Shown one piece after another: positions 2,298 to 50,853 of a DNA stretch of 64,000 nt (within the stretch, counting starts at the first letter, position 1; the number at the start of each line of letters is the position of its first letter). The position numbers were made by a program, and so were the translations under genes. Origin of the DNA: Aplysia californica (Eukaryota). Location of the stretch: NCBI RefSeq assembly GCF_000002075.1, contig NW_004797441.1, positions 733,047 to 797,046 of the forward strand, written 5' to 3'. Under the pieces are notes generated by a model. That model had not been told where the DNA came from, searched no databases, and saw only the letters and a program-made list of their open reading frames with translations.

Positions 2298-2397
2298 NNN
2301 NNNNNNNNNNNNNNNNNNNNNNNNNNNNNNNNNNNNNNNNNNNNNNNNNNNNNNNNNNNNNNNNNNNNNNNNNNNNNNNNNNNNNNNNNNNNNNNNN

Positions 2398-2470
2398 GGG
2401 GAAATGGAAAGTGGCCGTTTGTACAGGTGACCGTCTTATAGAGGTGGCCATCAGGGCAGGTTTGACTGTA
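2398..2470. mobile_element. Right end of a Tc1/mariner-pogo-type MITE emerging from the gap
   Basis: Ends ...GGCAGGTTTGACTG followed by TA, i.e. a CAGTCAAACC-type TIR. Confidence 0.5.
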
Positions 2471-3194
2471 TTAAAAAAATAAGAACACTTCTATTTTAGT
2501 AGGGAAAGTGTAGCAGGGTGCACTGACAAGGAAGCTGCCATTCATAAGTGGTGGCCAGCTCTGAGTTAATTAATTTAGACAGTGAAGAGGTCTCCATTTC
2601 ATTTTTTATGTCAAAGATGTAATACAAACAAATTCAATGGTTTTTATTGTAGAGTATGGTAGTTTGAGGGAAATAGAAAAAGAATAAGCGAAATGGCAAT
2701 CACTGAAAAAGTGTGCATAAAGAATTGTAAGTGAAGGAAACCCCCAGGGAATCTAGGCTTACCACTGACCTCAACAAAAGCAATAATGGTCTTGGGGTGT
2801 AAAATAAAAAGGTCCACACAGGGTTTTGATCCTCTTAAAGCGGCCCAGCCTTTTGTGAACCACCACAGGAGCCGTGCTACCAAGACAATGCATGGGTCAT
2901 GCTTCAGTGATCACTGTCACTTTCCACTACATGAACATTCCATACAAGTGGTTCTATCCATGACACTATGACTGATGAAAGAAGATTGCTCTTGTATCAA
3001 TCAATATCTAGATATTAAGTTTACATGTGTTTGACAAAGAAAATGGTAATAAGACCCTTTCATATTCTGAAGCCACACATTGGCTGAGCAACTGTTAAAT
3101 CAGAAAAATTTTGAAATAAAATAAGTTCAATACAGCAACAGAAGTTAATGCTTTGATTATATTCACTACAAACTTGATTATATTCACTACCCTG

Positions 3195-3932
3195 AAGTCT
3201 CTTATGAAAAAGTAAAACCGATTTTAGTGCCAGAATACATCTACAATGTAATACACAAACAGATTCCGTTACACTCCGTAAATTCCTTATTTTTCTTAAA
3301 ACGCCAAGTCTAGGTTTTGTAAGTTGACTGAATAACAGGGATGACTTCTTGTAATTGTGTTATAAGAATAATTTCTAGCTTTCCAGTGACACTGAATCAG
3401 CACCAGTCTTTTCCAGCTTTTATTTTCGTTGCTATGACCATTTGCAATAACTGATAGTGTTCTGACTTCTTTACATCATAAGTGTCCTTGCATACTTCCG
3501 ACACAAAAACTAAAAATGAAAGTGTTAGCTGTCATTATCTTTATTCCATACAAGAAGTGCATCTCTACCCATGTATTAACACAGTTTTGTGTTTTAAAAA
3601 AATCGCATAATATATCTTTCTTAGTTGTATGCAGGCTGCCGCAGGCCGCAGATACAGCATGATTCATGAACAAACGTAGAGTAACTTTCTCTTGTGTAAT
3701 GGAAGAACAAGAGCTAACGCTGAGTGTCTTTAGTTAAAAAATGCAGATGTGTACCTTTCTTCTCTTATAACGTGACTATTACTACTTGCGCAGATTTAAG
3801 ATTTCTCATGGTAAAAGATCTGTCGTGCTGTTTTTAAATAAAAAATCATTTATTCATAAGTTTGTAGCTAAAATAGGCACAGAAATTAACCATTCAAACG
3901 AAGAATAAATCTAAAGACATTAAGCTTTTAGT
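3195..3932. repeat. ~740-bp interspersed repeat, uninterrupted paralogue of 4933-5460 + 7227-7547
   Basis: Diverged direct copy. It carries the empty site (GTAACTTTCTCTTG...GAGCTAACGCTGA, ~3680-3725) of the LINE insertion. Confidence 0.8.
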
Positions 3933-4094
3933 CACGGCGCACGGGCAGTGGAATTTTAGTTGTCGCAGGGGGTTCCCCGCCGGGCGCCTTATCACGTCGG
4001 GGTCACGGGGGTCAGCTCCCTGTCGCCGCTCTGTCTGGGCCGACTTAATTTTTGGTACTTTTCAACGTACAATTTAAGGTGTATCCTTGTATAT

Positions 4095-4537
4095 ATATGT
4101 GAGGCAGCGTGGTGGAATCAGGCTCTGGTAAATTTTTGGGCATGTAGAGTTATTGGTATCATCTTAAAGCTGTTTCACTTGTGTTTATTTGGATGAAAAA
4201 AATATCCATTTATCTTGAATACAAGTCAAAATATTTGCGAATGAAGGAGGTGGGGGTCGCCTGTTTTCAGAGGTAAAACTAGTGAGAAAATGGCTGCTAA
4301 AGATTAGTTATTTCCTTAGCTTAAGAGTCCGTGGTAACTGAAAAGTTACATTTTTTGTGCCTTTAATCAACGTTTCTCAGAAAAATCCACACAGAAATGA
4401 GTTCTTTAATGGGCATGAAAGGTGTTGAGCCAAAAAGCAAAAATTTGATAAAAATTCACAAACCAGCAGAATAATGCAAGTTTCTTCAATTTGATTATTT
4501 TGACGAGAGCCTGATTCCACCACACTGCCTCACATAT
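4095..4537. mobile_element. MITE family A (TIR ATATGTGAGGCAGCGTGGTGGAATCAGGCTCTCGTCAAA); further copies at 18298-18741 and a diverged one at 19861-20280
   Basis: ~38-bp terminal inverted repeats, non-coding interior, three copies in the window. Superfamily unassigned. Confidence 0.8.
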
Positions 4538-5460
4538 GGTAATTCTCATTTAGTGCACCCAAAGCATGCATTTCTGCTCTTGAGATTAAAAAAAGAACAG
4601 ATGTTGTAAATTGTCTGGTTATTTCGTTAGACGCGCTGGAGTCGGCAATGCTAAATTGTAATTTCTTTTGGACGAGCGTGAATGAAAAAAAATCAATATA
4701 AAAAAAAGGCCTCGTCAAAATCTGTCGAACTTTTGGAACATGAATGACATAGCATTGGTGCAGATACTCAGAAAAGATGGTATCTGTGCATATAATAGAA
4801 AGCTGTAATTTTGCAACTTTAGCCATCGGGCACACAATTCGCTATGAAGTAATTCCTCCAAATACAACTTTATGTGTCTAATATAATCTTGAATATTCGC
4901 ATATTTTCTCGAAAGTTTATAAAAGTCACCATGAAGATTCTCTATGAAAAGTACAAATCGATTTTAGTGCTAGAATACATCTTCAATGTAGATCTAATAC
5001 ACGAACAGCATCTGTTACACTCCAAAAATTCCTTACTTTTCTTAAAACGCTAAGTCTAGGTTTTGTAAGTTGACTGAATAATAGGGATGACTTCTCGTAA
5101 TTGGGTTATAAGAATAATTTCTAGCTTTCCAGGGACACTGAATCAGCACCAGACTTTTCCAGTTTTATTTTTCGTTTCTATGACCATTTGCAATAACTGA
5201 CAATGTGACTGATTTCTTTACATTCATAATTGTGTCCGTGCATATTTCCGACACAAAAAAATAAGAATGAATGTGTTAGCTGTCATTATTTTTATTCCAT
5301 ACAAGAAGTTTATCTCTACCCATGTATTTACACGGTTTTTGTGTTTTTTAATCGCTTAGATTCTATATTATATCTTTTTAGTTGTATGCATGCTGCCATA
5401 GACACAGCATGATTCATGAACAAACGCAGAGTAACTTTCTCTTGTTTAAGAGTAAAATAA

Positions 5461-7226
5461 TGTATAGTATAAGGTTTTACGGCGCTCGCAACTGCTAAGG
5501 TCATATGAGCGCGCGAAACACAAGTTGTTCACCTCTGCGCAAGTTCACTTCACGACTGGCTAACTAATTTACTTTAAAATGCTAAAAAGTTAAAATATTC
5601 AAATTTGGTGTAAATACATTTGTGATCTAAAACAACTTTTAAGTAACAATAAAAATTTTTAATAATATCAAATTCACTCTACAACTCGCCATAAAGGCCA
5701 ATGGCCTTTATAAAATTTAAAATTCTGCTGGGAACAACGACGGAGAAAATATCCTGCAATTTCTTGCATTTATAATATTTCCTTCGGATCTCTCCAAAGT
5801 CTAGACATTCTGTTAAAATGTGTCTAATGGTAAAATCTGTGTCGCATCCGACACAGAACGGCTTCTCCTCTCCCTGTAGGAGGTATTTGTGGGTCAGGGC
5901 CGTGTGTCCGATGCGCAATCGAGTAAAAATGACTTCGTCTCTTCTGGAGAGATCCGAAGGATTTCGCTGTTCTAGTTTGGGTTTAATTTCATATAATTTA
6001 TTATTTTTCTGGTTTTCCCAGTGGCTCTCCCACAGACTGGAGGTGTACTTTTTGACTTTATTTCTAAAGTCAGTCTGTGGGAGAGTGTTTGTCGTTGATC
6101 CCAGCAGAAGGGATGAAGCTTTCTTGGCCAGGTCGTCTACCTGCTCGTTTCCTCGGATGCCCACATGGCTGGTATCCATGCGAACATGATGTTTTTTCCT
6201 GTTTCGGATAGTGTATGGATTTTCTGTTGTAGCCTAACTATTTTTGGGTGTATGAGTGTGTGGTTTGTGAGTGAGGTGATGCAAGACAGAGAGTCAGAAA
6301 GGATAAGGAAAGATTTGTTAGGAGAATTTTCTACAGAGTCCAGTGCCATGTCAATGGCAGTGGCCTCCGCAGTGAAAATGGAGGCTTCAGGATGGAGTCT
6401 CCTCTGGTGTGTATTGTTGGGAGATAGGGCTGCGGCGCCCACTTCATTGTCTTTTTTGGAGCCATCCGTGAAGATGAGCTCCGCACCGGGGTATTTATCT
6501 ATTAGTTTTTTGTATTCTGCTTGAAAAGTTTTGGTGTTTGTGCTTTCTTTGTTGTGTGTGGTCAGCTGTAAATCTACTTTTGCCTTGGTGAGGTGCCACG
6601 GAGGGAGGTCGGGGAAAAGAATTTGTTGGATGTCTTGTTTGGAAAAGTGTAAGTTTTTGAGGTCCTCAAGGATTCTGAGGCCGAAAGGTTTGATGAGTTT
6701 TTCGTTGTTTTGGAATTTGTTTCTGGTTTCTGGATTTGTTTGAAAAATGCTGTTGTGCGCTGGATTTTCCGGTGTTGAGCTCTGTTTAACTGCGTATTGT
6801 AGTGAGAGTTGTGTGCGTCTGAGTGAGAGTGGTGGTATGTTGGCCTCGGCCTGGAGGCTCTCCACCGGAGAAGTGCGGAAAGCCCCCAGAGCGAGGCGGA
6901 GTCCTTGGTTTTGTATTGGATCTAGTATTTTTAAGACGTGTGGTTTTGCCGATCCGTAGACTTGACAGCCGTAGTCAAGCCTGGACCGGACAAGGGAGAT
7001 GTACAAGTGGAGAAGGTGTTTTGAGTCCCTGCCCCACTCCGTATTTGATAGAATTTTCAAAGCGTTTAACGCTTTCTGGCACCTCATACGAAGGTCTTTG
7101 ATGTGTGGTATGAATGTAAGTTTTTTGTCGAAAATGACGCCGAGGAAACGAGCTTGGTCCTGGACGGGAATCCTTTCCCCGTATAGTGTCAAATCCGGCT
7201 GCAGCACACGTCTGCCTGTTCGGCAG
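5461..7226 (-). mobile_element. 5'-truncated LINE (I/Nimb-type non-LTR retrotransposon): RT C-terminus, RNase H, CCHC zinc finger, 3' UTR
   Basis: ORFs 6137-7207 and 5679-6179 are joined by a 1-nt deletion (WIP/[S]HVGIRGNE). Motifs FLGVIFDKKL, FTDGSK and C-x2-C-x8-H-x4-C (CVGCDTDFTIRHILTEC). 12-bp TSD AGAGTAAAATAA at 5449-5460 and 7227-7238. Short (TATAC)-type tail. Confidence 0.92.
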
Positions 7227-7868
7227 AGAGTAAAATAAAAGCTAACGCTGATCGTCTTTAGTTAAAAAATGCAGATGTGAATCTTTCTTCTCTTATAACT
7301 TGACTATTTCTACTCGCACAGATTTCAGATTTCTCGTGGTAAAAGACATGATATTCGTAGTCAGTTTAACATAGATTTTGGAGAGACCTGTCATGCCTTT
7401 TTGTAAATTAACAATCATTTATTCATAAGTTTGTAACTTAAATTGGACAAATTGGGTACTCAACAAACACTTGTCTAGAACAAAATCTAAGGCACAGAAA
7501 TTAACCATTCTAACGCAGAATAAATTTCAAGACATTGAGCTTTTAGTACATCCGCGTAATGGTTTGCTATGTGGGATGGGGAAGAAGTTATATTGTTTTA
7601 AACTTAGTCAAAAATGCGAACTTCCTAACCGACACCGGCAAAGCCGCTTCTGGGCTCATTAACCCCGTGACCCCGAGCCGGGGAGCTCCGACGGGCTGCT
7701 GAGTCATGCGAACTAAAAGTAACACAATCGGGCGAAAGAAAAAAGACGCCGTGTAGTACATCCGTGCAATGGTTTGCTGTGTGGAATGGGGAAGAAGTCA
7801 TATAGTTTCAAACGTAGACAAAAATGTGAACTTTTTTACCGACAGGCAAAGTCGCTTCAGGGTTCATT

Positions 7869-10800
7869 TGTAGTGTCCTAGATACGGTTATCCCACCAAG
7901 TACGGTATTAGTATTTCAAGTCGGTGTTACCCGCCTGTGTGTTATGCAATGTAGGTCAATTAAACAAAGAAAGTCTCAGAACACCCGTTCATGGATGTCG
8001 CATGTGTTTTTCTTATTGTGCTAGCCCCTTCAACATAACAAGTGGCGACGAGGGTAAAACAAACATAACTTACACCTTACAATAGTGCAAAATTGTTTGG
8101 AGGTAAGTGACAACAATTGACAATTATCAAAATGACCTCAGTGGCAATTAGCCTGCCTTCCTTCGATCGTTTCGTCGTACACAGTGGTGAAAGTACCACA
8201 GGCACGAGGTGGCAGAAATGGCTCTCCCAGTTCAAGTTATTGCTGACAGCAATTGGCGTCAGCGACGCCGTGAGAAAGAAAGCTTTACTACTGCATTACG
8301 CTGGTGAAGAAGTTTTCGATATATACGAAACATTCTCAGCTGCACAAAAAGGATCTAACACTGAAGCAGGATACAACATACTCTGCCAGTCCCTCACAAT
8401 GCATTTTGCCCCTCAGAAAAATATTGATTACGAAACATTCAAGTTCCGACAGGCGAGACAAGAAGCTGGCGAGAACATAGATTCTTTCTGCACCAGACTA
8501 AGAAAGCTAGCCGCCACATGTGATTTTCAAGACTCAGAGAACTAAAATCTCAAATATTACAGGGCTGTACATCGCAACGCCTGCGCAGACGTGCTCTGTG
8601 AGATGACCTCGATTTACAAAACCTGCTCAAAGCAACAAGGGCTCTCGAGATATCAGATGAACAAGCACAGGAAATTGAAGCGGATAGAAAGCCTGCCACT
8701 ACTGTCTATAATATCAGCAAGCAGCACGCAGCAAAAGGGAAAGCTTCAAGATTCCCATCCACCACACATCGCCTGTACCCCCCATTTCAGCCATCACATC
8801 GTCGCTATCATCAAACGCATGAGAACAGACCTTGTGGATGGTGCGGAGGATTACGACATCCTCGTGATAGATGTCCTGCAAAGGACAAGACCTGCAAGAT
8901 GTGTTCTAAACTTGGTCATTTCTCTAAAGTTTGTAGATCAGGTAACAAACCTTCTACACACCGTCGACACAGCACAGCACATGTGAAACATGTCACCAGC
9001 AACCTAAATGAAAGCAGTGACACCTCAGAGGAAGACTACGTTTTCGGTGTCAAAACCAACCAGAAGACTCCCCAAGTGAACTTAGATCTCTCAGGAGAGA
9101 GCATCCCTTTTTTAATTGACACTGGAGCATCTGTAAACATTCTAAATGAGCAATCCTACAAGAGCCTTAGCCATACACACAAGTTGACCCCCTCATCTAC
9201 ACGTCTCTTTGCATACGGCAGTAACAAACCACTGCAAGTCATTGGACAATTCGAGTCCACCTTAAAATACAAGAAACACCGCGTGCAAGCAACCTTCCAT
9301 GTGGTTCGTTCACAAAAATCAACGAAATGTGGCAATCTTTTAAGTGCAAAAACAGCAGAAGACATGAAATTGTAAATTTCGCATTCAGTGCGACAACCAC
9401 ACCTACTCATTCTTTAACAAACAGTCTCTGCAGTGAATCCCCAGAGCTATTTAAAGGTCTCGGCAAATTAAAGGGCATCAAGGTCACACTGCATCTGGAC
9501 CTGTCAGTCCAACCTGTCGCCCAACCACATCGCCGAATACCCTTTCACCTCAGAAAGAGAGTGGAGGAAGAGATCCAACGCCTAGAGCAGCTCGACATTA
9601 TCAAGAAAGTGGATGGTCCGACACCATGGATTTCTCCCATTGTCATGGTGCCCAAACCCAAAAAACCTGGTGAAATTCGACTCTGTGTGGACATGCATGC
9701 TCCCAACAAGGCAATCAAGAGAACACGCCATATCATGCCCACACTAGATGACATTCTGATGCGTTTAAATCAAGCCAAATGGTTCACCAAGCTTGACCTC
9801 AACCAAGGCTATCATCAACTGGAGCTTGATCAAGAATCAAGAAACATAACTACATTTTCAACGCATATTGGCCTTCGTCGATACAAGCGACTGAATTTCG
9901 GTGTCACAAGCGCTGCAGAAATATTTCAGAACCACATTTCAGAAGTTCTCTCCGACATCAACAACTGCCTCAACACCAGTGACGACATCCTGGTCTACGG
10001 TAAAACGTAACAAGAACACGACGACTCTTTGAAGAAAGTCTTTGAGCGCCTGAAGGAGAAAAACCTCACACTGAACAAACAAAAATGGGAGTTCAATAAA
10101 AACTCCATTGAATTTTATGGATTTATCTTTGGAGGAGACGGTGTCTCTCCAGATCCCAAGAAAATCAAAGCGATCCACGAAATGCCGGCACCAACGAATC
10201 AAAAGGAAGTTTGCAGCTTCCTAGGCATGACTAACTACGTCTCTCGGTTCATCAAGGACTATGCTGACCTCACAAAGCCACTCAGAGACCCAACACGCAA
10301 AAATACACCCTGGTCGTGGTCCGAGGAACACCAGAAATCCTTCAACACACTCAAAGACATGATCACCAGTGACAAAGTCATGACCTACTTTGACCCTAAT
10401 CTCCTCACTGAGGTCACCATTGATGCAAGTCCATTTGGACTTGGCTGCCTTCTCTCACAGCGTGACAACAACAACGTTCACATAGTGGCATACGCAAGTC
10501 ATGCTTTGACTGATGTCGAGTCACGATACTCTCAAACCGAGCGAGAAGCTCTTGCCGTCGTCTGGGCGTGTGAACATTTCAACCTGTACTTACTTGGTGA
10601 ACACTTCACAGTAATCTCTGACCACAAACCCCTTGAAGGAATCTTCAACAGCACAACATCCAGAACCTCAGCAAGAATTGAACGATGGAATCTCAGACTC
10701 CAACCTTACGACTTCACCCTACGCTACCAGCCAGGAGAGAATAATCCAGCTGACTTCCTCAGCAGACACCCTTTTGAGAAAAACAACGTGACCTCCAGTC

Positions 10801-12971
10801 ATATGGCTAAAATCGCAGACGACTACGTCAACTTCATGGCCGGTCATTCAGTCCCTAAAGCCATGACTCTGGAAGAAATTGCCAGCGCATCAGAAAGCGA
10901 TCCAACACTCCAAGCAGTCATCAAATCTGTTCAAACAGATCATTGGCACACGCCGCCTGAAATCACTGTAGATGCTGCCAGTTACCAAGTCTTCAAAACT
11001 GTTAGTGAAGAACTCTCTGTTCACAAAGATGGAACAATTTTACTGCTGGCACACAAATCGTTATCCCTAGATCATTGCAACAGCATGTTATCAACATTGC
11101 TCACGAAGGACATCAAGGCATCGTTAAGACTAAACAACTCCTGTGTGAAAAAGTTTGGTTTCCCCACATTGATCGTCAAGTGGAGAACACTGCCAAATCA
11201 TGTCTAGCATACCTGTCAACAATTCCAGAACACCATTCTGAACTGCAAAGAATGACTCCTTTGCCAACGAAACTTTGGTCTGAAGTTAGTATCGACTTCT
11301 GTGGACCATTCCCTTCTGGTGACTATCTACTAGTTGTCATAGATGACTACTCACGCTTTCCAGAAGTAGAAATCCTGTCATCTACCAGTGCAAGAGCCAC
11401 AATCCCAAAACTTGACTCCATCTTCGCTTGTCATGGTGTCCCACACACCGTCAAGTCTGGCAATGGTCCACCCTTCTCCAGCTACGAATTCAAACAGTTT
11501 GCTTCGCAGCTAGGATGTAAACACCGCAGAATAACTCCTCTCTGGCCCCAAGCCAATGGTGGTGTTGAAAGATGCATGCGAATGCTCAAGAAAACAGTGC
11601 AGTCTGCACACATTGAAGGCAAGCCATGGAAACAAGAACTATATCACTTTTTGAGGAATTACCAAGCTACCCCCCACATCAGCACTGGTGTGAGCCCAGC
11701 AGAAGCTCTGTTCAAACACAACATCAGAGTGAAACTACCTCAGATAGATTCACTCATGAAACCACCAACGACTGACAATGACATTCGTCAACATGACACC
11801 AACAAAAAGGAAGCAGCAAAACGGTACGCTGACGATCGTCGACATGCCCGAAATTCCGACATACAAGTAGGAGACACTGTCCTCGCTCGTCAACCCTACA
11901 AAAACAAACTGTCATCGTTCTATGACCATGATCCATACCAAGTAACCTCTAAGAAAGGTCCAATGGTCACCGCCAGTCGCAATGGCAAAAACATGACTAG
12001 AAACACTTCATTCTTCAAAAGAGTGCCTGATACTCTGAAATCATCCAACCCTACAAACTCAACAGAGGAAGAAGAGGAGGATGAGGACAATGAAGCTTCG
12101 AATGAAACAGCAGACAATCAAAACCCAACTACTACCAATGAACCAATCGCGACTGAACGTCCCCAACGTCACCGTAAGCGTCCTGGATACCTAAAAGACT
12201 ATGTGACTTACTCAAATGAACATTCGTCAAGCTGAAATTGAAACATGAACATTGTAATCGTGTCAAACAAATTTTCTACTCATTAACTCAGTGCATTCTG
12301 TTTTGTCTCGTGTCCAGTGTACTCTGATTCTTCGCACAGTTTCGTATCTGTAGTGTAAGCAGAGAAATCTTGGTGTATATTATGTATCCGTTCCACGTTC
12401 ACTCTATTAAGTTATTCACTTTTAATTTCAGACTAGCCGTCTAGATGTTTTTTTGTTGTCAATCTCATCGTAAGTAAAATAATCAAGAACTATACACCTA
12501 AATTAGCATAAGATCAAGAGCTCGCTGAAATTCGTTATCGTGATGTTCCTTTATTATTTTTCATCACATGTACATCTACCTCTTGTTAAAGTTAAAACTA
12601 ATATTAAAAAAAAACCAACAACAACAACAAAAACCCACTCTATGTTCATCGACTAACAAACGTTTTATTTTGCCTCTTTGATGTCCATCCCCTTCAATCA
12701 ACTACTAAATAAATAGCTAAAGAAGTTGCTGTACATCAGTTCTTCCACACTAAGGAAAAGATGATTTTAAACGAAGTAACCATTCAAGGCTAGGAGGGAT
12801 GTAGTGTCCTAGATACGGTTATCCCACCAAGTACGGTATTAGTATTTCAAGTCGGTGTTACCCGCCTGTGTGTTATGCAATGTAGGTCAATTAAACAAAG
12901 AAAGTCTCAGAATACCCGTTCATGGATGTCGCATGTGTTTTTCTTATTGCGCTAGCCCCTTCAACATAACA
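7869..12971 (+). mobile_element. Full-length, decayed Ty3/Gypsy LTR retrotransposon, Mag-like lineage
   Basis: 172-bp LTRs (7869-8040 and 12800-12971, TG...CA, 2 mismatches). 5-bp TSD TCATT (7864-7868 / 12972-12976). PBS TGGCGACGAGGGT at 8043-8055, complementary to the tRNA-Ser(GCU) 3' end. PPT AAGGCTAGGAGGGA at 12786-12799. Confidence 0.96.
8132..12235 (+). pseudogene. Disrupted gag-pol of the Gypsy element (gag with two CCHC knuckles, protease, RT, RNase H, integrase)
   Basis: CGWCGGLRHPRDRC and CKMCSKLGHFSKVC; FLIDTGAS; KLDLNQGYHQL and NTSDDILV; TIDAS, SQTEREALA; HEGHQG, SIDFCGPF, VVIDDYSRFP. Frameshifts near 8545, 9370 and 11046; stops at 8599 and 10008. Confidence 0.93.
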
Positions 12972-14039
12972 TCATTAACCCCGTAACCCTGAGCCGGGGA
13001 GCTCCGTCGGGCTGCTGAGTCACGCTAACTAAAGGTAACAGAATCGGGCGAAAAGTGACGCCATGTACGGTGCTCGCCGCTCGCAACTGCATGAGGTCAC
13101 ATATGAAAGCGCGGGACATTTGTCTGTCTGCATTTATGAAAGAGATGATGTGGAAATATTTATTGCCCTCAGCTGAAACCCGGTTCTTGTGGATTTTTAT
13201 TTCAGAATGGGTTCTTAGGCATGCAAATTATAGAGAAAAGATTACGCTGCAAAAGTTGCAAAAGGTCGGGTAACTTTGTGCCCTGGACTACCCCGAAGAG
13301 TGATTTAATTATAGTATGAATCTGAAATTGAATCTGAAGCCTTCAACATACAGTAATTTTCGGTGATTTTGTAGTTTTGTTAATTAAACGTCCAAAGCTG
13401 AATGCCAGAGATCCTGAATTGCCAGGTAATTGTTGAGGAGTGAACTAAGCGTCAGACAGGAAGGAAACACTAGAGTAAAGCCAGAAAAATTAATTCAAGC
13501 AAAGAATGGCGCTTTATCGGCAGTCCACCTCCCAATTATTATTCGCCCGTTTAGGTCCCATGAGGCAAGAGTGGGGGGGGGGGGGCGGGGGGGGGGGGTT
13601 CAGGGGCATTTTTTGACCTAATCAAAATATGGAGGGGGGTTTAAGGGGGGCCTGAATTTTACCATAATTTGATGGTTTGTAAAGGTTACATCCCTGTTTT
13701 TTGTGTTGCCTATTTGGTCATCAAGACTTCAGGATTTCTTCTCTGGATGTAAACAAATGGATTGTGGACTTTAACGAACGGAACTACAAGATCACCTAAT
13801 TTTCATGTATACTATAGGGGTAATTTTTAAGCTGCACCTTTTTTTAGCAATGACCACGAAAAACCCTTTTTTTGCCAGAAAGTGTTTGCAAATAGGTGCA
13901 TTTTGTAGCTGTATCTTCACAGAGCATGGAACTTTTTGAATTTTTGAAATCCATCAATAAACAAAAAAGTTACTAATTTTTTGATAAATTAATTTTTGGT
14001 ACACTTTTAATGAAAAACCCCCAAAATATGGGACGTTCT

Positions 14040-14390
14040 TTGGTGAGTTTTGAGACAATATTTGTCTTAACTCGCTCATTTCTCGGAGTATTTAAAAGAA
14101 ACTTGGCAACCCAGTACATTTTCTAGTGCAGAATCTAGTCCTGCTTTCAGATTTTTCATAGCTATCCTACTTTTTGAGATATGAAGATGTTTATAGGTAA
14201 AAATGTGGCGGTTTTCGGTGCGTTTTGAGACAATATTTGTCATAGCTCGCCTATTTCTTAGAATATGTAAATGAAACTTGGCAGTCTAGTACATTTTTTA
14301 ATGCAAAATCTAGTCATGCTGTCAGATTTTTAATATCTTTAATACTTTTTGAGTTTAAAGACATTAACAGGTAAAAAAGTGGCGTTCTTT
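14040..14390. repeat. Two tandem ~175-bp units (GAAACTTGGCA motif), followed by a 33-bp hairpin (14527-14559) and CTAG at 14564-14567; candidate rolling-circle (Helitron/Helentron-type) non-autonomous element
   Basis: Units start GGTG(A/C)GTTTTGAGACAATATTTGTC at ~14042 and ~14217. Hairpin GAGCTGGATTTATTAG/CTAACAAATCCAGTTC. The tandem repeat is directly seen; the class is inferred. Confidence 0.55.
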
Positions 14391-14740
14391 ACAGATTTAC
14401 AAAGATAAATCAGTCATATCATACGTTCTCCCAAAGTCATGATATTTGAATGAAACTTTGCAACATAAAAGGTTCCTCCTTGTCAAGCAATGCTCTGGAT
14501 CAATTTGTCACAAAAATGTAAGTAGAGAGCTGGATTTATTAGTCTAACAAATCCAGTTCTGTACTAGTAAAAGCATGCATACTTTGTTATAGAAAATAAG
14601 ATCGTCTCAGTGTATATTGTTGGACAGTGTCCTATTGTGTGGTAGATTAAGATACGTTCAGATAATATAGTTTACAAGTCATGGGAATATTTCGCATGTG
14701 TAGGCTACAACTCATACAATAAATGTAACATTATTTACAA

Positions 14741-14850
14741 CCCCCCCCCCCCCACCCCTCTCTCGATCTCTCTCTCTCTCTCTCTCTCTCTCACGCACAC
14801 ACACATATACACACACACATGCATGCGCACGCACTCACGCACGCACGCGT
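14741..14850. repeat. Compound microsatellite poly-C/(CT)n/(CA)n/(CACG)n
   Basis: Direct inspection. Confidence 0.9.
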
Positions 14851-16280
14851 GAATGATAACAATGTATAGACGGGATTATCTTCCCAGACTGGACTAAATA
14901 AGTACCATACTCTCTAATAACAATCTTAATGCCTCACTTTTCCAAACAGAGCACACAGGACGAGTCCAAGTGTGTGCTTTCCCAAGAGGGGGGAATAGGC
15001 TTTCATAACGCAAACAAAAATGCCATACCACTTCTCAAGATGTTTGCTTTTCTGTTTCTATTCTTCTGTCATGCAATCAAGCAAATAAAAATGACTACAT
15101 CTATTGTATTGTGACTAAAATGCTACAAAAACGCAAATTATCAAGGCCCCCGTTTAGTTTTCAAGTGTCCTTCCCCCTCCTCTCCGGTTCACATAAGCGT
15201 GGCCTCGATTGTAGCGCCCAAGGCGACCGATGGCTGATGACGTCACTCAGTGGAAATTTCCCAGCCGCCGGTCATTCACCAAGCACGCGCAAATGGCAAT
15301 GTCGCTTTTTCCCTTAGTTACTCCCACATTTTTAAATATTACGCAAAAACCGCTAAACACAGAAGCATGAAATTTTAAGGGAATAAAGAAAAATGGTGTA
15401 CAACGTATCAGTCAGTTTGACAAATCACAGCTCTGAAAAATCTTCAAAGCGCACCACATCAACCACTTTCGCTAACGTTTTCGACTACTTCTTGGATGGG
15501 TACAAAGTTGTCAAACTGCATACTACAAGATTGACCTCTTTTCTGATTGGCTGCCAAGTTTCATTCATATTCATTCACGAGAAGCGGCGTGAGAGCGGGT
15601 TGAAGACAACAACCTTTGCGTTAGTGCGTCCCACGAAACGGGGGCCAAAAATCGGCAGAACAAAACGCGCTCGGTGGGCATTGCTATTTTTTTATCTGGT
15701 ATACTAGGGAACCGCTTGAGCTACCGTCTCTAGTGACCCCACCATGACCCTTTGACTGTGCTATCGGGACGGACCGAGTTGTTACTACAATAATATAACT
15801 ACACGCATGCACGTACGATATGTGTGTCCCCAGGAACGCATGCATGTTTTTTAATGGACCAGATGGAATTATCAGCCCGCTCGAAAGGCTCTGCCTGTCT
15901 CTCTCTCTCTTTAATCTCTCTCCCTCTCTGTCTCTCTCTTTAATCTCTCTGTCTCTCTCTTTGAACTTCCAGGCCTACTGCGGAAAGGGTTCCTGCATCA
16001 TAGCAAGCAAAGGTAGGGCCTGAAATCAAAGTCGACAAAGTTGTGAAACTAGTTACATCAGTTGTTTAGATCTAGATCTACATCTAGTTACAAATTAAAA
16101 GTTCAACTGGATATTACTGACAGTTCTGATAGTATATGAAATCCACACCGGCAGGTCTTGTTATTTAGATTCTAGATTCTAGATCTATTTTCTGTTCGGA
16201 TGGAGTCGCCCTTTTCGGCTTTCACTTTACACTACTTACTACTACAGTTACAGTTCACACACACTTTACGAAAGCCCCAC

Positions 16281-16331
16281 CTTAACGAGGATCTGTCCCA
16301 CATCCTCAGGACGAGGTTCAATTTCCGTCAT
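16281..16331 (-). CDS. IQCH: Probable first coding exon of IQ motif-containing protein H (MTEIEPRPEDVGQILVK); remaining exons not found in window
   Basis: ATG in good context (AAAATGA), 17 codons, phase-0 GT donor (AAG|GTGGGG). Resembles the human IQCH N-terminus MAQNTENHDPVGSILIQ (recalled). Divergent from AAGAB with 176 bp between start codons, as in the human head-to-head pair. Confidence 0.6.
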
Positions 16332-16507
16332 TTTGTCCCCACTATTTTGCAACTGATATTATATCTACATCAACTGTAGGGGTATCACAACCACTGAAGA
16401 CCAAGAAAGTTTTAAATGTGTAGCCTCCGCAGGGAGGCCGCCATCAGGTTCCTCAGCAACAATGTACACATCAAAATTTGATGACGTAGTTAGCAGTCAA
16501 ATCCAAT
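16332..16507. promoter_or_regulatory. Putative compact bidirectional promoter/5' UTRs between IQCH-like and AAGAB
   Basis: 176 bp between divergent ATGs. CRE-like TGACGT at ~16482 and YY1-like AATATGGCG overlapping the AAGAB start. Confidence 0.5.
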
Positions 16508-19500
16508 ATGGCGCTGCCCTGTGTTTTGTTTTCTTCCTCAGTGGCTGATTACGATCCGAAAGAATTTGTGAAAAGTAAGTTTAAATCTTCTATTTTGTGT
16601 ATGTTTTCGAAATGTTATTGCAAGAACTCGCTGTTTACTTTAAAGATAGATCTTTAAGGTATTCTGTTAGACCCAGGTCTAAGTGCATCAGATCAGTCAT
16701 CAGTGTCTGAGTCTGTTGTTACTGTAGTTGTAGTACTGTAGTGTAGTCTGTAGTAGTGTTTAGTGTTAGGACTTTGTATGTCAACTGACTCAACTGTGTG
16801 TGCGATGCCGGCTGATCACGATGGTAGAGCTAGATTCTACTATCTAATCTAGATCTAGATCTAGATCTAAATTCTATAGATCTAGATCCGCCCGCAGATG
16901 CATTGTTTTGACGGCTAAACTGCCTCAGTTTTTGCTCACACTCACAGAACACACAAATGACCACTAAAACTTAGGTCTACAGTAAAACCTTTGCAAATCC
17001 CCCTTTTCATTTCTTTGTAAACTCAATTACCTGTGCTCGGGTTTAATGGGGCAAGGAAAGGCACAAACTTAGATACGCTGGAGACATCGAGCGAGCTAAA
17101 TTGCTGGGGGGAAGGGGGTTGCGGGGCTGTAGGTGGGGTCCAAACAGGCAGTCTGCGGTGGGGCGTTGTGATTGGCCAATCCAGTGATGAGTGAGGTGGG
17201 GCAGGCTGCGGAGAGAGATGATGTAGAGAGACTCGTTACGTAAGCTACTATAAAAGTGATGTGCCATAGTCTTAGCCAAGACACTCAGTATGAGAGCGTG
17301 TACTGTATAGGCCATCGGGAGGACTTCCGTAACAAGTGACCACTATGAGACAGAGCAGAATTGAGAGCTTGGGGTCGGGGTAGGGGTAAGGTTAGGGGTT
17401 GGGTAGGGTTAGGGTTAGGTCTAGGCCTCTTCTTTATTGTGTTTGATGGGGTGGTCGCTCGTTACGGAAGTCCTTCCTGGCCATCCCTAGGCGTGGGCTA
17501 GGCCAAAAAGTAAAGGAAGAGGAGAGCGTGTATAGATCTAGTGTGTAATTCCTGATTCATTGAATTGGGATCGTTGATGCTCAGGCATATATATGCCCCC
17601 GTCCACTTCACCAGTTCTACAGTTGGCCTGCCGATACGATAGACTGCACAAAAGCAACAAGACCAAGGAAAAGATGGCTTCAAACAGAGACAAAGAAATG
17701 CTTCTCACTTGAATTAAAGACTGAGCTAATCAACGAAGTTGACAAGAAAAGGAAGACTAATCTAAAGCGCAAATTTTATTGTATCAATATGGAAAGGAGC
17801 TAATCATGTGGATTAAAAAAATTTTTCCGGTAATTTCCCCTTTGCATTCCTACTGCGGGAACTTGCCTACAGCGGAATTTTTCTTCTGGAACCAAAAGTC
17901 CCGCTATATTGACAAGTGCCTGATTCCACTGCATCTTGACACATTTGACTGCTCCAGTTCAGGACAAATTCGAGTCGTGTGGAATCCGCCATTAGTCTAC
18001 CTTTTTCTGTCGACTATTGAGAATATTGGACTTCCTTTTTGGAAGGAGAGGAGGGGGGTGCAAAAAAAAAAAATGCCGACCCCCCCCACCCCACTGAATA
18101 AAGCCACAAACATTTTCCAAAATACTGAACTCAACTTTTTTGTATTCCCCGCTCAAAATATCCCCTCTTTTGTGTGTTGTTGGTCAGCCGGCCTTCTGCG
18201 GAACTCCTTCCATAAAAACAAGTCTAATAAATATTACTACACCAAGCATTGGTCCAAGTCCTTTTGTAATATAGTCTGTATAAAAATATCCTTAATTATA
18301 TGTGAGGCAGCGTGGTGGAATCAGGCTCTCGTCAAATTTTGGGCATGTAGAGTTATTGGTATCATCTTAAAGCTTGTTCACTTGTCTTTATTTGGATGAA
18401 AAAAATATCCATTTATCTTGAATGAATACAAGTCGAGATATTTGCGAAAGAAGGAGGTGGGGGTCACCTGTTATCAGAGACAAAATTAGTGAGAAAATGG
18501 CCACCAAAGATTCGTTAATTCCTTAGCTTAAGAGTCCATGGTAGCTGAAAATTTAAATTTTTTGTGTACCTTTAATCAACGTTTTTCAGAAAAAGCCACA
18601 CAGAAATTAGTTTTTAAATTGGCATGAAAGGTGTTGAACCGAAAAACAAAAATTTGATACAAATTCACAAACCTGCAGAAAAATGCAAGTTTTTTCACTT
18701 TCATTATTTTGACGAGAGCCTGATTCCACCACGCTGCCTCAATAAGCTCATGAACTAATGATTTGCAGTGGGTATAAAGTCAAAATTTGTTTAAAGCAGA
18801 TAAAAATGAACAAATAATAAATCCAGCCTCTATGGTATAGACCAGAGGAGAGGTCTAGATCTATCCTTTTATTGTCACTATTGACCAAGACTAGTTCTAA
18901 TGTCTCATGAAAATTTCAGATTTGCCACAGTTTGTACATTTTCTAATTACGTGGATGCAACTTTAAAAAATACTTTCGAACTGTACCAAATTTTCGTTCT
19001 ATGATTATTAGGACCAAATTTATGGCGTTTTTTTAAAGGTAAAAACCATTTTTAACATTACTAAGGTTAATTACTATTTTTAGTAGTCTTAATAGTGTGT
19101 GTATGTTTTAGTGTTGTGAAGTTAACTAGGTCACGATTGAGTTTATCACTTATTGTGTCTTTTTAAATGAATTAAATCATACACATAAGTTTCTCAATAT
19201 GATTCAGACTAGTTTAGGGCCAAGATGATAAAGGTCAGTGTATAGTGTTCAAACCATGGCTTAGAAAAGAAAGTTGGTTTGTCCTACTAAATCTTTTTTC
19301 TCACCCAGTCTTGTCAATAGTCTGTTGGGCTTTGTGAGATTGAGAACTAAGAACTTCGGTTGCGATTGGCTGGAGTGCAGTACAAACTAAAGCCAGTGAT
19401 ATGTTCCAGTTAAGTTCAAGCTATCAGTACTCAACTGTTTAGAAGGTATGACAGGAATTATTTTTAATAGTATTATAATCATACCGGTTCCCGTGCTCAT

Positions 19501-22500
19501 TTTGTGTTTCTGGCTGTCTTTTTTGTTCCAGGAATTTTGAATGTTGCCGTACTTCCTACACCTCAGATTCTCACAGATAATGTTGAGAGCTATGAGTGGG
19601 CCTTTGAAAACAAGTATTATAGCACAAGTGTTCACTTGTGTACCACTGACAGTAGGACCATTGGGGACCAAGATTTTGCAGAATCTGTTGAAGCTTTTGT
19701 CCACTACTTTGACCCTAACCAGGTAGTCTATTGCTTTTTTTATGAGCCTGATGTATATCATGGTGTGCACAATAGGTCTGCTTTTACAGTGTTTGTTAAG
19801 TATACATTTCGTGATTGTGTATCCTAGTGTGTCTGTGTCAACTAAATTACCAGTAAGCATACTTGTCATGACGCGATTGAAACAGGCGCTCGTCAATATT
19901 TGGGCATATTGATTTATTGGTATCATCTTAAAGCGTGTTTGCTTGTCTTGCTTTCAGTGAAAAAAGTAACCATCTATATTCAATAGAAGTCGAGATATTT
20001 GCTTTTGAAGGATGTGGGGGTTGCCTGGTTTCAGGGGTAAAAATAAAGAGAAAATTGCTGTCAAAGTTTGATGAATTCCATAGCTGGAGAGCCCTGGGAA
20101 ACTGAAACTTTACTTTTTTTGCGCCTTTAATCAACGTTTTTCAGTAGAATCCACACAATAATGTGATTATAAATGGACATAAAAGATGTTTAAAAATTGC
20201 CAAACCAACAGAAAATCGCCTGTTTTTTTAAATTTCATTATTTTGACGAGCGCCTCATTTCACCACACTGTGTCACATATGTTGTGATTTGTTTTAAGTT
20301 GGTGGGGGGAGGGGGGGGGGATACTTTTTGTTCTATGCTGCATCATTTCATTACCTTTTCTTTCTTATCTCATTGCTTTATAAAATTATACTTAAAGTTT
20401 AGTTGTATGTAGCTACTGAATTTATTCCACAAAGAGCTTTGAAAGTTGAAAGGGCTTTTACTTTTTGCCTTGAGTTGGACTGGAGTGTGCTCTGTTTCAT
20501 ACTTCTGATGACTTTGACACCGCGTGTTTGAAAAAAAAATGTTTTGTTTTCCCTCTATACATATTTTTTTTTGTCTACTTTTTTCTACAGCTTAATTCTT
20601 TTGAACTTGCAAAGGCATGGCTTCCCTACCTCAAGCATATTGAGCCAGAAATTCAAATCTTGGTCTGTGAATGTAGCAGATATACAGATGGTAAGAGTCT
20701 GTCTTTCCATGAAATCAACTGAATTCTTCATTTTGTTTTTAATGAAAGGGAAGCATGGACAGCTAAATTTTGTTGTAGCAATTTATGATACAATTATCAA
20801 TACCATTTTGTTTTTTAGTACTTTTGAAAGAAGGTCTTTCATAAATTTAAGTTACTTATTTTGAAAGAGTGTTTTAATTACCAGACTGTAAATTTGTAAT
20901 CCTGGCATAAAGTTCAGTCTGCTCATGTTTAGGTAGAAAGGAGCAACTGTACCCATGACCTATAAATGATTGCATGTTTGTTTAAATTACTCAACTTAGT
21001 TTTGATCGCATTTGTATTTATCAAATTGTATTAATATATATTTCCCTAACCTTTTTACAGGTTCTGTTGTTAACTACTTTTTTTTTCTTCATTTCAGTTG
21101 TATGTAGGAAGGAAACACTTGAATGGTGCATTCAGAATGGATTTGAGTTGGTTGAACTATCACCTGAAAACGATGAAGATGAGGGTAATTAATGCACACT
21201 CAAACCCTATTATACCGTCAAACTTTAGACAAGCATGAAGCTGGCAGTTTGATGGGGCTGTTGGTATATTTATTAACAAGTTTTAAATAGCAAAAACTGC
21301 CAAACATCAGGGGAAATAATTCTGCCATCAGAGCAATTTGCTGTTGTGACTTTGAGGGCTTTGTTTTAAAATATTGCAAACTTCTTACTTTTTCTGAGCA
21401 GTCAAGCATGAACGTTTTCCAGCCATCTTGACAAATGGTGGGGTAGACTGGTAGAGACAAAGTGTGGACAGTTTTGCCGTACCTAGGTCTGTCTTGCGTA
21501 GTTGCTGTGCTCAGAGGAAAAACAATAAGAAATCAGTAACGGCTACACCAAAGCGTTAGGTCATGACCATGTAAATTCAAATTGAAAATTACAGCCAGAT
21601 TGGAGGCTAGGGCCTACTTTTCAAATTCAAATGCTTTCCGTCTGAAATCTGCAAGATGAGAGTTGGGAGGTGAGGTAGGAGGGGAGAGAGCAACTAGTAC
21701 TAGCTCACAGTCATGTGTGGGAGAAAGGAGATTATTTATTCCTGCACAGTTGTTGAGTGGGTACTTTGAGTGATGTGTACTGTGTATCTTTGCCTGCCAA
21801 TTTCATTGTCGGTGCTGTAGCACATATTTACATTAATTTAGTAAGGACCATATGACTTGGGAAGATGGCAGTTTAAGGGGACAAACCGTATGTTTATACA
21901 GGTAATGCTTTTCATACGTTTGCAAAACCTGGTGGTAAGCGGGACTGGCGGCATAACAGGGTTTGATTGTACTCATTATTATGTTATTTTTCTATTAATA
22001 TATTGGGTAAATTTATAGAAACCCTCCTGTCTCATAAAGGGTATTATTTTGTAGCTTTTTATGGGTCTTTTAGGGCCCTGAACACGATTTATCATATATT
22101 GTATTAAATATTAGATTTTGAAGGCAGAAACCCATCAGATCAGAATGTCTCGGCTTCCATTGTGATTATTGCAATGTGTCAAACTTGTTTATTATGAAAA
22201 CCTGTGCAATGCCGAGAAGAAAATAGAAACTGACTCTCTCCCTTGATACAATTTTATCTAAAGTGGAAGGTATTGTTAAAGTATAGGCTCAGTGTAATTA
22301 ACACATATGGGACCGGCCTCACACTTGACTTTCAGTTCCCCAGGACCGTAGCTGTCGCCCATTTTCTGACTATGCGAGATGCATGTTACTCTAGTATGGA
22401 TAACTCAGCCACTAGTAAATTTGTAAACATGGAACTTCACTAAACTGTTAAGAATATTTGTTTCCCAATGCTAAAACACCTGTTTAAAAAAAATGTATTT

Positions 22501-48253: not shown

Positions 48254-48482
48254 ATCTAGACTCTAGAATCTAGATCTAGATTAGATCTAAATCTAAATCT
48301 AGAATCTAGATTCTAGATCTAGATCTAGATATTAGACTTAGTATTCTGAGAATCTTTGGTGCTAGAATCTAGACTAGATCTAGATTTAAATCTAGATCTA
48401 GATCTAGATCTAGATCTTAGATGTAGATGTATAGATCTAGATCTAGATCTAGATCTAGAATCTAGATCTAGATTCTAGATCT
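48254..48482. repeat. Degenerate self-complementary (TAGATC)n/(TCTAGA)n array
   Basis: Direct inspection. Smaller arrays at 16067-16186, 16829-16887, 44211-44225, 49157-49172 and 50667-50740. Confidence 0.9.
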
Positions 48483-50315: not shown

Positions 50316-50853
50316 ATGGAAATCCAGTTTTCGAAAGGGACTGTCATTCTGTCGATCTGCTTCATCTGTGTCTCCTATTTGTTTTACACGTATTCCGAAG
50401 ATCAAGATTTGCCTGATGAAAGATATGTGATCGATTCATGGACAAAACTGGTTAATCTGCCCCCTAATCAGTTCAAGCGGCTTGCTGTTGGGTAGGCTAA
50501 GTAATTATAGATTCTAAGTAATACGTTGGTCCTTGGCTTGTTTGGGAGTGTATATCAGACCGGGTAACGGGAACAAAGTCACAAAGTATACAGACCCGGT
50601 AGGGGAACTCTTTTGTGATTTCGGAGCGTTTCAGCGCCCTCTTGGCTCAGGGTAGACCTAGGTTCTTCTAGATCTAGGCAGACAGACATAAATCTTTCAT
50701 CTAGTTTCGCGGGTAACCTAGATTCTAGATTCTAGATCTAAATGAAGATTGCGGATGTCGTTTCGATGGACGATGGTTTGTCCTCCGTTTCGGAATTGGA
50801 GGAATCACAATCCGAAGAAAAGAACAAGTTACAATGTCATAATTTCAATCGAG

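What the first reader, a model, noticed from the sequence alone, without database searches (positions are those of the whole stretch)
16281..16574. Hidden IQCH-like exon head-to-head with AAGAB: a bidirectional gene pair apparently shared between this invertebrate and human
Seen: a 51-nt minus-strand exon (MTEIEPRPEDVGQILVK, phase-0 donor) starts 176 bp from the AAGAB ATG and is too short for the ORF track. Recalled knowledge: human IQCH begins MAQNTENHDPVGSILIQ, has a first coding exon of about this length, and is head-to-head with AAGAB at 15q23. Inference: a very compact divergent promoter coupling a ubiquitous adaptor-complex chaperone to a testis/cilia-associated gene has survived since the protostome-deuterostome split. 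All of 1-16280 would then be IQCH intron 1.
Basis: partly seen in the sequence, partly recalled or inferred. Interest (0 to 1): 0.8.

Follow-up and report, generated by a model that had tools for sequence, protein, structure and literature searches.

The report
IQCH first exon facing AAGAB
A 51-base first coding exon of the sperm/cilia gene IQCH sits back-to-back with the start of the housekeeping gene AAGAB, 176 bases away, in this sea-hare genome as in frog and human; the exon is already in the public annotation, so this is a correct but fairly ordinary case of an old conserved gene pair.

Summary
On the minus strand, ATG 16331 to AAG 16281 (17 codons) is followed by a GT donor. It lies 176 bp from the AAGAB ATG at 16508.

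A public protein named IQ domain-containing protein H isoform X2 [Aplysia californica] begins with exactly these 17 residues. Its next 36 residues are encoded 21.7 kb to the left on the same strand, and the rest of IQCH follows further left. RNA-derived contigs from two studies cover 16464-16281 and leave the genome at the donor. Among 138,819 six-frame 9-mers in 114 kb, this exon is by far the best match to the conserved IQCH N-terminus.

Xenopus tropicalis has the same layout: AAGAB and IQCH are head-to-head with 213 bp between the ATGs, and IQCH exon 1 also codes 51 nt. Human IQCH-AAGAB is a catalogued divergent pair.

The pair is not adjacent in a flatworm, a rotifer or a sponge, and no AAGAB lies within 10 kb of IQCH in Hydra or lamprey. 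Deep ancestry therefore rests on two phyla.

The exon is hidden only from an ORF track, not from annotation. Verdict: a real, already annotated exon and a further example of conserved head-to-head microsynteny. Interest is modest.

The parts
16281..16331 (-). IQCH first coding exon: 17 codons, ATG at 16331, with a phase-0 GT donor at 16280-16279
   Evidence: Sequence. Identical to residues 1-17 of the public Aplysia IQCH protein P0201. Best N-terminal motif match in 114 kb.
16332..16464 (-). IQCH 5' untranslated part of exon 1, minimum extent as covered by RNA contigs. It holds two short upstream ORFs (ATG 16444 with 10 codons, and an ATG-TAG pair).
   Evidence: An X4 contig lies on 16279-16464 and an X5 contig on 16279-16442. 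The upstream ORFs were read.
16465..16507 (.). Core of the divergent promoter, lying between the outermost RNA contig ends of the two genes. It contains a TGACGTAG (CRE-like) motif and a CCAAT abutting the AAGAB ATG.
   Evidence: Contig ends are at 16464 (IQCH) and 16513/16519 (AAGAB). Motifs were read. True start sites were not measured.
16448..16460 (.). X-box-like (RFX-type) imperfect palindrome GTTCCTCAGCAAC, 117 bp upstream of the IQCH ATG
   Evidence: Pattern scan. A better palindrome sits 47 bp upstream of the Xenopus IQCH ATG and another 199 bp upstream in lamprey. This is a lead only.
16508..16574 (+). AAGAB first coding exon (MALPCVLF...), phase-1 donor GTAAGT
   Evidence: The GT..AG joint 16574->19532 is seen in RNA contigs of two studies. 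The Xenopus AAGAB N-terminus is similar.
19532..19722 (+). AAGAB exon 2
   Evidence: Joint and loose end. tblastn hit to the Xenopus AAGAB locus at E=1e-9. Single copy in the genome.
1..16280 (-). Right-hand 16.3 kb of IQCH intron 1 (21,706 bp in all). It is filled with retrotransposon remains.
   Evidence: Exon 2 lies at window -5427..-5534 (L006 4573-4466). Transposon ORFs are listed.

Best explanation
Window 16331-16281 (minus strand) is the genuine first coding exon of the single-copy Aplysia IQCH gene. It is spliced across a 21.7-kb, transposon-filled intron to exon 2, which begins VQDDLRQL.

Its transcript starts at or beyond 16464. That is at most about 50 bp from the observed 5' end of the oppositely transcribed AAGAB mRNA, whose ATG is at 16508. 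The two genes therefore share one very compact divergent promoter without a CpG island.

The same head-to-head pair exists in Xenopus, with the same 51-nt IQCH coding exon 1 and the same phase-0 intron position, and the pair exists in human. The linkage is thus most simply inherited from the bilaterian ancestor and lost by rearrangement in several lineages.

Shown: the exon, its splicing, the gene identities, the head-to-head layout, and the Xenopus and human layouts. Inferred: shared regulatory elements, possible asymmetric control of the IQCH side by an RFX-type X-box, and ancestral rather than convergent origin.
For: - Sequence.
- The IQCH ATP-grasp domain (PF24923) is found only on the minus strand of the same contig, 40 kb to the left.
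- tblastn with full-length orthologues maps IQCH exons across contig 703,464-725,783.
- Exon 2 has an AG acceptor and phase 0.
- The motif score of this exon is an outlier among all sites in 114 kb.
- Public protein P0201, named IQ domain-containing protein H isoform X2 [Aplysia californica], comes from a contig of 1,287,649 bp, the same length as this contig.
- P0201 residues 1-17 and 18-53 equal the two exons exactly. The other exons match at 95-100%.
- P0201 scores 5e-128 against PF24923.
- An X4 contig (1196 nt) and an X5 contig (327 nt) both match only down to 16279, then continue for 997 and 163 letters that are not on the genome there.
- The 2-nt overhang is what is expected, because exon 2 starts with GT.
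- The AAGAB joint 16574->19532 in the same runs shows that they are spliced RNA.
- Xenopus: AAGAB (PF10199) lies on the opposite strand with its ATG at L016 9787. The IQCH ATG is at 10001, and exon 1 is 17 codons followed by GTAAGG.
- The intron position after ...LL[VE][KQE] is also kept in Hydra.
- Human: IQCH TSS 67,254,786 (+) and AAGAB TSS 67,255,195 (-), listed as a divergent pair in PMC12672016 Table S1. PMC3101357 Table 2 also lists it.
Against: - The letters of the RNA contigs beyond 16279 were not shown to me. The junction to exon 2 is therefore inferred from the break point, the 2-nt overlap and the public protein, not read directly.
- Contigs cannot give true transcript starts, so the 50-bp spacing is an upper-bound estimate, not a measurement.
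- One poly(A) RNA run (X21) has AAGAB exon-1 reads but none on the IQCH exon. The two sides are therefore not tightly co-expressed.
- The pair is not adjacent in Macrostomum, Adineta or Sycon. No AAGAB lies within 10 kb of IQCH in Hydra or Lampetra.
- No other mollusc, annelid, echinoderm or amphioxus locus could be read: the look-ups were exhausted and the amphioxus contig is truncated.
Confidence: 0.88

Rival explanations
1. The exon and the head-to-head layout are real, but the adjacency arose independently in gastropods and in jawed vertebrates. It would then not be a retained ancestral pair.
For: Five of the seven other lineages examined lack the adjacency. Flatworm, rotifer and sponge have other upstream neighbours, and Hydra and lamprey have no AAGAB within 10 kb. 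The vertebrate neighbour C15orf61/DUF4528 lies on another contig in Aplysia.
Against: Independent juxtaposition of the same two single-copy genes is very improbable when it involves the same orientation, under 250 bp between ATGs, and an identical 51-nt exon 1 with the same intron position. Flatworms and rotifers are known for scrambled gene order (general knowledge). TIPIN and ADPGK, which also lie on human chromosome 15q, sit next to the pair here.
Confidence: 0.07
2. The exon is only one of several alternative first exons. The main (germ-line) IQCH promoter would lie elsewhere, for example inside the 21.7-kb intron, and the AAGAB-proximal start would be a minor by-product of divergent transcription.
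For: P0201 is labelled isoform X2, so other isoforms exist. IQCH contig depth is lower than that of AAGAB in the same runs, and X21 shows no IQCH reads.
Against: No other site in 114 kb encodes the conserved N-terminus, and orthologues from sponge to mammals begin with it. Contigs from two studies use this exon. Frog uses the homologous AAGAB-proximal exon.
Confidence: 0.04
3. This is a chance short ORF with a chance GT beside the AAGAB promoter.
For: It is only 17 codons long, and short ORFs are frequent.
Against: The motif score is an outlier. It is exactly identical to the start of the public IQCH protein. RNA contigs break at the donor.
Confidence: 0.01

Closest known systems
Human IQCH-AAGAB divergently paired genes on 15q23
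   Same: The same two orthologous genes in head-to-head orientation. Their 5' ends nearly touch or overlap: the human start sites overlap by 409 bp (PMC12672016 Table S1). In PMC3101357 Table 2, IQCH is among the genes 'head-head linked' with a list that includes AAGAB.
   Different: The Aplysia promoter has no CpG island (CpG observed/expected 0.40). Intron 1 is 21.7 kb. The next gene beyond IQCH is not C15orf61. I did not read any human DNA; the human layout is cited from papers only.
Xenopus tropicalis aagab-iqch pair (locus L016)
   Same: Head-to-head, with 213 bp between ATGs against 176 bp here. IQCH coding exon 1 is exactly 17 codons, ending at the same homologous residue with a phase-0 donor. 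The AAGAB N-termini are similar (MA(S)LPCVL). An X-box-like palindrome lies upstream of the IQCH ATG.
   Different: The promoter sequences are not alignable by eye. The frog X-box match is near-perfect and lies 47 bp from the ATG, whereas the Aplysia one is weaker and lies 117 bp away.
Conserved ancient microsyntenic pairs sharing bidirectional promoters (for example HSPD1-HSPE1; Irimia et al. 2012, PMC3514665)
   Same: A 5'-5' orientation, a very short intergenic distance, and retention across phyla. These are the signature that paper describes for co-regulated conserved pairs.
   Different: Co-expression is not evident here: one gene is broadly expressed and the other is testis/cilia-associated in mammals (PMC10112910, PMC11259432). 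I could not check whether this pair is in that paper's list, because its supplements are not held.
PACRG-PRKN type pairs: an axonemal gene sharing a promoter with a broadly expressed gene
   Same: A flagellar/ciliary gene is coupled head-to-head to a gene with an unrelated cellular function (bioRxiv 10.1101/783373 abstract).
   Different: The genes are unrelated, and no functional data exist for the Aplysia promoter.

Membership tests
IQCH (IQ motif-containing H) | IQCH-like ATP-grasp domain (PF24923) in the same transcription unit | tested here: met
   Five exon hits on the minus strand of the same contig, E down to 1.8e-38. The public protein that starts with this exon scores 5.2e-128.
IQCH (IQ motif-containing H) | Conserved N-terminus ...[DE]x[VI]Gx[IL]L[VI][KQ] followed by VQxDL, split by a phase-0 intron | tested here: met
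   Exon 1 ends ...EDVGQILVK and exon 2 starts VQDDL. The motif is present from a sponge and an ichthyosporean to mammals. The intron is at the same place in Xenopus and Hydra.
IQCH (IQ motif-containing H) | IQ calmodulin-binding motif (PF00612) | tested here: inconclusive
   P0201 residues 454-472 score 18.3 bits, below the 20.3-bit cut-off.
IQCH (IQ motif-containing H) | The exon is spliced to the downstream IQCH exons in RNA | tested here: met
   Two RNA contigs leave the genome at 16279, with the 2-nt overlap expected for exon 2. The public protein joins the exons. The contig letters beyond the break were not shown.
AAGAB (alpha/gamma-adaptin-binding protein p34) | Adaptin_binding domain (PF10199) | tested here: inconclusive
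   A single exon gives 25 bits at E=3.4e-5, below the 32-bit whole-protein cut-off. The whole-genome six-frame search found nothing, as expected for a domain split across exons.
AAGAB (alpha/gamma-adaptin-binding protein p34) | Similarity to an annotated AAGAB gene of another animal | tested here: met
   Aplysia exons hit the Xenopus gene that carries PF10199 at E=1.4e-12 and 1.4e-9. The N-termini are alike.
Bidirectional (divergent) promoter pair | Two genes on opposite strands, 5' ends facing, less than 1 kb apart | tested here: met
   176 bp separate the two ATGs. RNA contigs reach 16464 on one side and 16513 on the other.
Bidirectional (divergent) promoter pair | Shared regulatory elements or co-regulation | not testable with these tools
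   There are no start-site, chromatin or reporter data. One poly(A) run shows AAGAB exon-1 reads without IQCH reads.
Conserved ancient microsyntenic pair | The same orthologous pair adjacent in the same orientation in distant phyla | tested here: met
   Mollusca (this window) and Chordata: Xenopus and human from PMC12672016.
Conserved ancient microsyntenic pair | Retention across most sampled animal lineages | tested here: not met
   The upstream neighbour is different in Macrostomum, Adineta and Sycon. No AAGAB lies within 10 kb in Hydra or Lampetra.
RFX (X-box) regulated ciliary/flagellar gene | X-box palindrome close upstream of the start | tested here: inconclusive
   Degenerate X-box matches occur in 5 of 9 IQCH upstream regions, against about 0.24 hits expected per 660 bp. 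The Aplysia site has only one good half-site. No binding data exist.

The most novel reading that the evidence does not exclude
The IQCH-AAGAB promoter is an asymmetric divergent promoter kept for more than 500 million years. A constitutive core would drive AAGAB, while an RFX-type X-box on the IQCH side would add germ-line/ciliated-cell expression. The pair would stay linked because the two start sites are too close, or overlap, for a breakpoint to separate them without damaging one gene.
Probability: 0.25. Interest if true: 0.45.

Novelty: new member of a known kind. Interest (0 to 1): 0.3.

Why it matters
For annotation it changes nothing, because the public Aplysia gene model already starts with this exon.

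For evolution it adds a clean example of a head-to-head pair kept between a mollusc and vertebrates. The two genes have unrelated functions: an adaptor-complex assembly factor and a sperm-flagellum/cilia protein. Conservation extends to the length of the first coding exon and the intron position.

Such pairs are the natural material for asking whether very short divergent promoters are kept by shared regulation or simply because they cannot be split. This one is small enough (under 200 bp) for direct reporter dissection.

Tried and rejected
- The whole-genome six-frame search with PF10199 (AAGAB) found nothing. The domain is split over short exons, so this says nothing about absence.
- Exact-protein look-ups for the Macrostomum UniRef entry, Chromosphaera and octopus IQCH were not on record.
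- The amphioxus contig starts inside the gene, so its upstream side is unknown.
- The two closest full-length relatives from metagenomes (P0020, P0099) are intronless copies. One lies beside Tmem26-like exons and the other beside a non-LTR retroelement. They are uninformative for synteny.
- Pfam found nothing in three ORFs of the gene downstream of AAGAB. That gene was identified instead through a Swi3 exon.
- There is no CpG island at the promoter.
- Supplements of Irimia et al. 2012 are not held.
- The invertebrates in PMC12672016 Table S3 are only yeast, fly and worm, so that table does not bear on spiralians.
- A chance ORF was rejected.
- I sent no joined exon model to any search tool. 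The exons were handled by reference, and the public protein P0201 served as the joined form.
- No human DNA was fetched. Human positions are quoted from papers.
Full report
**What is at the coordinates.** On the minus strand, an ATG at 16331 opens 17 codons (MTEIEPRPEDVGQILVK) ending with AAG at 16281. These are followed at once by GTGGGG, a phase-0 GT donor. On the plus strand, an ATG at 16508 opens [23 protein letters not shown] and runs to a GTAAGT donor after 16574. An in-frame stop lies 10 codons upstream of the minus-strand ATG, and no in-frame ATG lies between them.

**Where the window comes from.** The window is contig C171:733047-797046 of a 927,310,431-bp assembly in 4,332 contigs. 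A public protein from a contig of the same length is labelled Aplysia californica.

**Is there an IQCH gene to which the exon could belong?**
- A six-frame search of the whole assembly with the IQCH ATP-grasp model PF24923 gave five exon hits. All lie on the minus strand of the same contig at 705,873-709,714, about 40 kb left of the candidate exon, and none lie elsewhere.
- One of these exons, searched against 1.8 billion representative proteins, returned IQCH proteins. They come from stingray, frog, lamprey, octopus, Hydra, a jellyfish, a sponge, a flatworm and the ichthyosporean Chromosphaera.
- tblastn with the full-length proteins placed IQCH exons across contig 703,464-725,783 on the minus strand. 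It left the first roughly 115 residues unplaced.

**The conserved N-terminus.**
- The orthologues share an N-terminus of the form ...[DE]x[VI]Gx[IL]L[VI][KQ] followed by VQxDLxxL[KR].
- A search of the minus strand for the second half found one site, at window -5427 (L006 4573). There...ttcaAG is followed by GTT CAA GAT GAT, encoding VQDDLRQLREKM... for 36 codons up to a GT donor.
- Exon 1 plus exon 2 therefore reads ...EDVGQILVK|VQDDLRQL..., exactly the family pattern.

**Is it more than chance?** I scored every six-frame 9-mer in 114 kb around the locus against the nine residues that precede VQxDL in 14 orthologues.
- The candidate scores 21.4.
- The next best of 138,819 sites scores 14.4, and the next best followed by GT scores 12.6.
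- The background mean is -8.8 with sd 5.3.
- No competing first exon exists in the intron or elsewhere nearby.

**Public annotation.**
- A word search with the closest full-length relative returned P0201, 'IQ domain-containing protein H isoform X2 [Aplysia californica]'. It is 1,097 aa and comes from a contig of 1,287,649 bp, the length of C171.
- Its first 17 residues equal the translation of window 16331-16281. Residues 18-53 equal L006 4573-4466. Further exons match this contig at 95-100%.
- P0201 hits PF24923 at 5e-128 and has a sub-threshold IQ motif.
- The exon is therefore already the annotated first coding exon. It is hidden only from a naive ORF list.
- N-termini of other gastropods are nearly identical (Nucella, Littorina, Physella, Lymnaea). 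Those of bivalves, a brachiopod, echinoderms and hemichordates are closely similar.

**RNA evidence.**
- In run X4, a 1,196-letter contig lies on 16279-16464 in the minus sense. Its remaining 997 letters do not lie on the 318 bases of genome available to the left.
- In run X5, from another study, a 327-letter contig lies on 16279-16442, with 163 letters off the genome on the same side.
- Both contigs therefore leave the genome at the same base.
- The two extra matched bases (16280-16279, GT) are expected, because exon 2 begins with GT followed by T where the intron has G.
- The same runs hold a GT..AG joint 16574->19532, and a loose end at 19722 that reads into the next AAGAB exon. The runs are therefore spliced RNA, and AAGAB exon 1 is confirmed.
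The link to exon 2 thus rests on the break point, the overlap and the public protein.
- A poly(A) run kept as raw reads (X21) has reads on AAGAB exon 1 and none on the IQCH exon.

**The promoter.**
- IQCH RNA reaches at least 16464, giving a 5' leader of at least 133 nt. The leader holds two tiny upstream ORFs.
- AAGAB contigs reach 16513-16519. Contig ends are not RNA ends, so the true start sites are at most about 50 bp apart and may overlap.
- The segment is not a CpG island: CpG observed/expected is 0.40, against 0.59 for the whole window.
- It contains a CRE-like TGACGTAG, a CCAAT abutting the AAGAB ATG, and an imperfect X-box-like palindrome at 16448-16460.
- Degenerate X-box matches occur upstream of IQCH in 5 of 9 loci examined. 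These include a near-perfect palindrome 47 bp from the Xenopus ATG and one 199 bp upstream in lamprey. The background is about 0.24 hits per 660 bp.
- This fits a flagellar/ciliary gene, since IQCH loss causes sperm flagellar defects (PMC11259432, PMC10382937, PMC10112910). It is a post-hoc, weak lead only.

**Identity of the plus-strand gene.**
- One exon matches the start of Pfam Adaptin_binding below the whole-protein threshold.
- Aplysia exons hit the Xenopus gene that carries PF10199 at E=1e-12 and 1e-9.
- Exon 2 is single-copy in the genome.

**Is the pair shared with other animals?**

| Lineage | Layout near IQCH |
|---|---|
| Xenopus tropicalis | AAGAB on the opposite strand with ATG at L016 9787; IQCH ATG at 10001; 213 bp between them; IQCH exon 1 is 17 codons then GTAAGG, the same length and intron position as in Aplysia |
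| Human | IQCH start site 67,254,786 (+) and AAGAB 67,255,195 (-) on chromosome 15, listed as a divergent pair overlapping by 409 bp (PMC12672016 Table S1); PMC3101357 Table 2 lists IQCH among genes head-head linked with a list containing AAGAB |
| Macrostomum (flatworm) | An afadin-like gene on the same strand lies upstream of IQCH |
| Adineta (rotifer) | A RhoGEF gene lies upstream |
| Sycon (sponge) | TMEM17 lies upstream |
| Hydra, Lampetra | No AAGAB exon within the fetched loci, which include 10 kb upstream of IQCH |
| Amphioxus | The contig is truncated |

By parsimony the pair predates the mollusc-chordate split. However, this rests on two phyla, and I could not read other spiralian or ambulacrarian loci. 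Such 5'-5' pairs with very short spacers are the typical class of conserved ancient microsynteny (PMC3514665).

**Wider neighbourhood.**
- Downstream of AAGAB lies a minus-strand gene with a Swi3/TIPIN domain exon at window 40502-40636.
- After it comes ADP-dependent glucokinase on the plus strand at 56.8-63.9 kb.
- Human TIPIN is on chromosome 15 at 66.39 Mb, 0.9 Mb from AAGAB (PMC12672016 Table S1). From my own recollection, unverified, human ADPGK is also on 15q.
- The vertebrate neighbour C15orf61 (DUF4528), seen next to IQCH in frog and lamprey, is on another contig in Aplysia.

**Verdict.** Novelty is low, because the exon and both genes are in the public annotation and the human pair is catalogued. 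What is new is only the explicit mollusc-vertebrate comparison, a further member of a well-known class. I fetched no human DNA and sent no joined exon model to a search tool.

Noticed in passing
window -2376..7071 (L006 7625-10000 plus window 1-7071): Two tandem copies of a 4,755-bp unit at 99% identity, carrying non-LTR retrotransposon ORFs (reverse transcriptase/RNase H-like, minus strand). A run of N sits at the junction near 2,320-2,420. This may be an assembly duplication around a gap or a true tandem duplication.
   Followed up: partly
window 8117-12235 (+): A gypsy-like LTR retrotransposon inside IQCH intron 1, with gag-, protease-, reverse transcriptase- and integrase-like ORFs in three overlapping frames. 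It was read from the ORF translations only.
   Followed up: no
window 16065-16082, 16848-16886; also 48269-48472, 49161, 50667-50742: (TCTAGA)n palindromic microsatellite fields. There are 24 matches against 0.13 expected in the window, and they cluster on both sides of the IQCH/AAGAB promoter. They cluster again in the gap between the TIPIN-like gene and ADPGK. A first-stage note reports the same pattern at another bidirectional promoter of this genome.
   Followed up: partly
window 30890-43985 (-), Swi3 exon at 40502-40636: A TIPIN-like gene lies tail-to-tail with AAGAB. It has a Swi3 domain exon (E=8e-10) and a C-terminal ...RIERNKQLAMERR... motif. Human TIPIN lies 0.9 Mb from AAGAB on chromosome 15.
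   Followed up: partly
window 56805-63904 (+): ADP-dependent glucokinase exons, matching PF04587 at E down to 6e-47.
   Followed up: partly
L011 10001-13168 and L012 10001-13333: Two full-length intronless IQCH genes on metagenome contigs. One lies next to a non-LTR retroelement and the other next to Tmem26-like exons. They are possible retrocopies, or come from intron-poor eukaryotes.
   Followed up: no
L014 1-7155: In the sponge Sycon, the gene upstream of IQCH on the same strand is TMEM17-like (PF09799), another cilium-associated gene.
   Followed up: no
window 18222-18753: Extremely high RNA/contig depth and many variant letters over a repeat inside AAGAB intron 1. This is an abundantly transcribed interspersed repeat family, with a poly(A) loose end at 18336.
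   Followed up: no
window 16442-16444 and 16370s (-): Two upstream AUGs in the IQCH leader: a 10-codon ORF (MAASLRRLHI) and an ATG-TAG pair. Both precede the main ATG.
   Followed up: no
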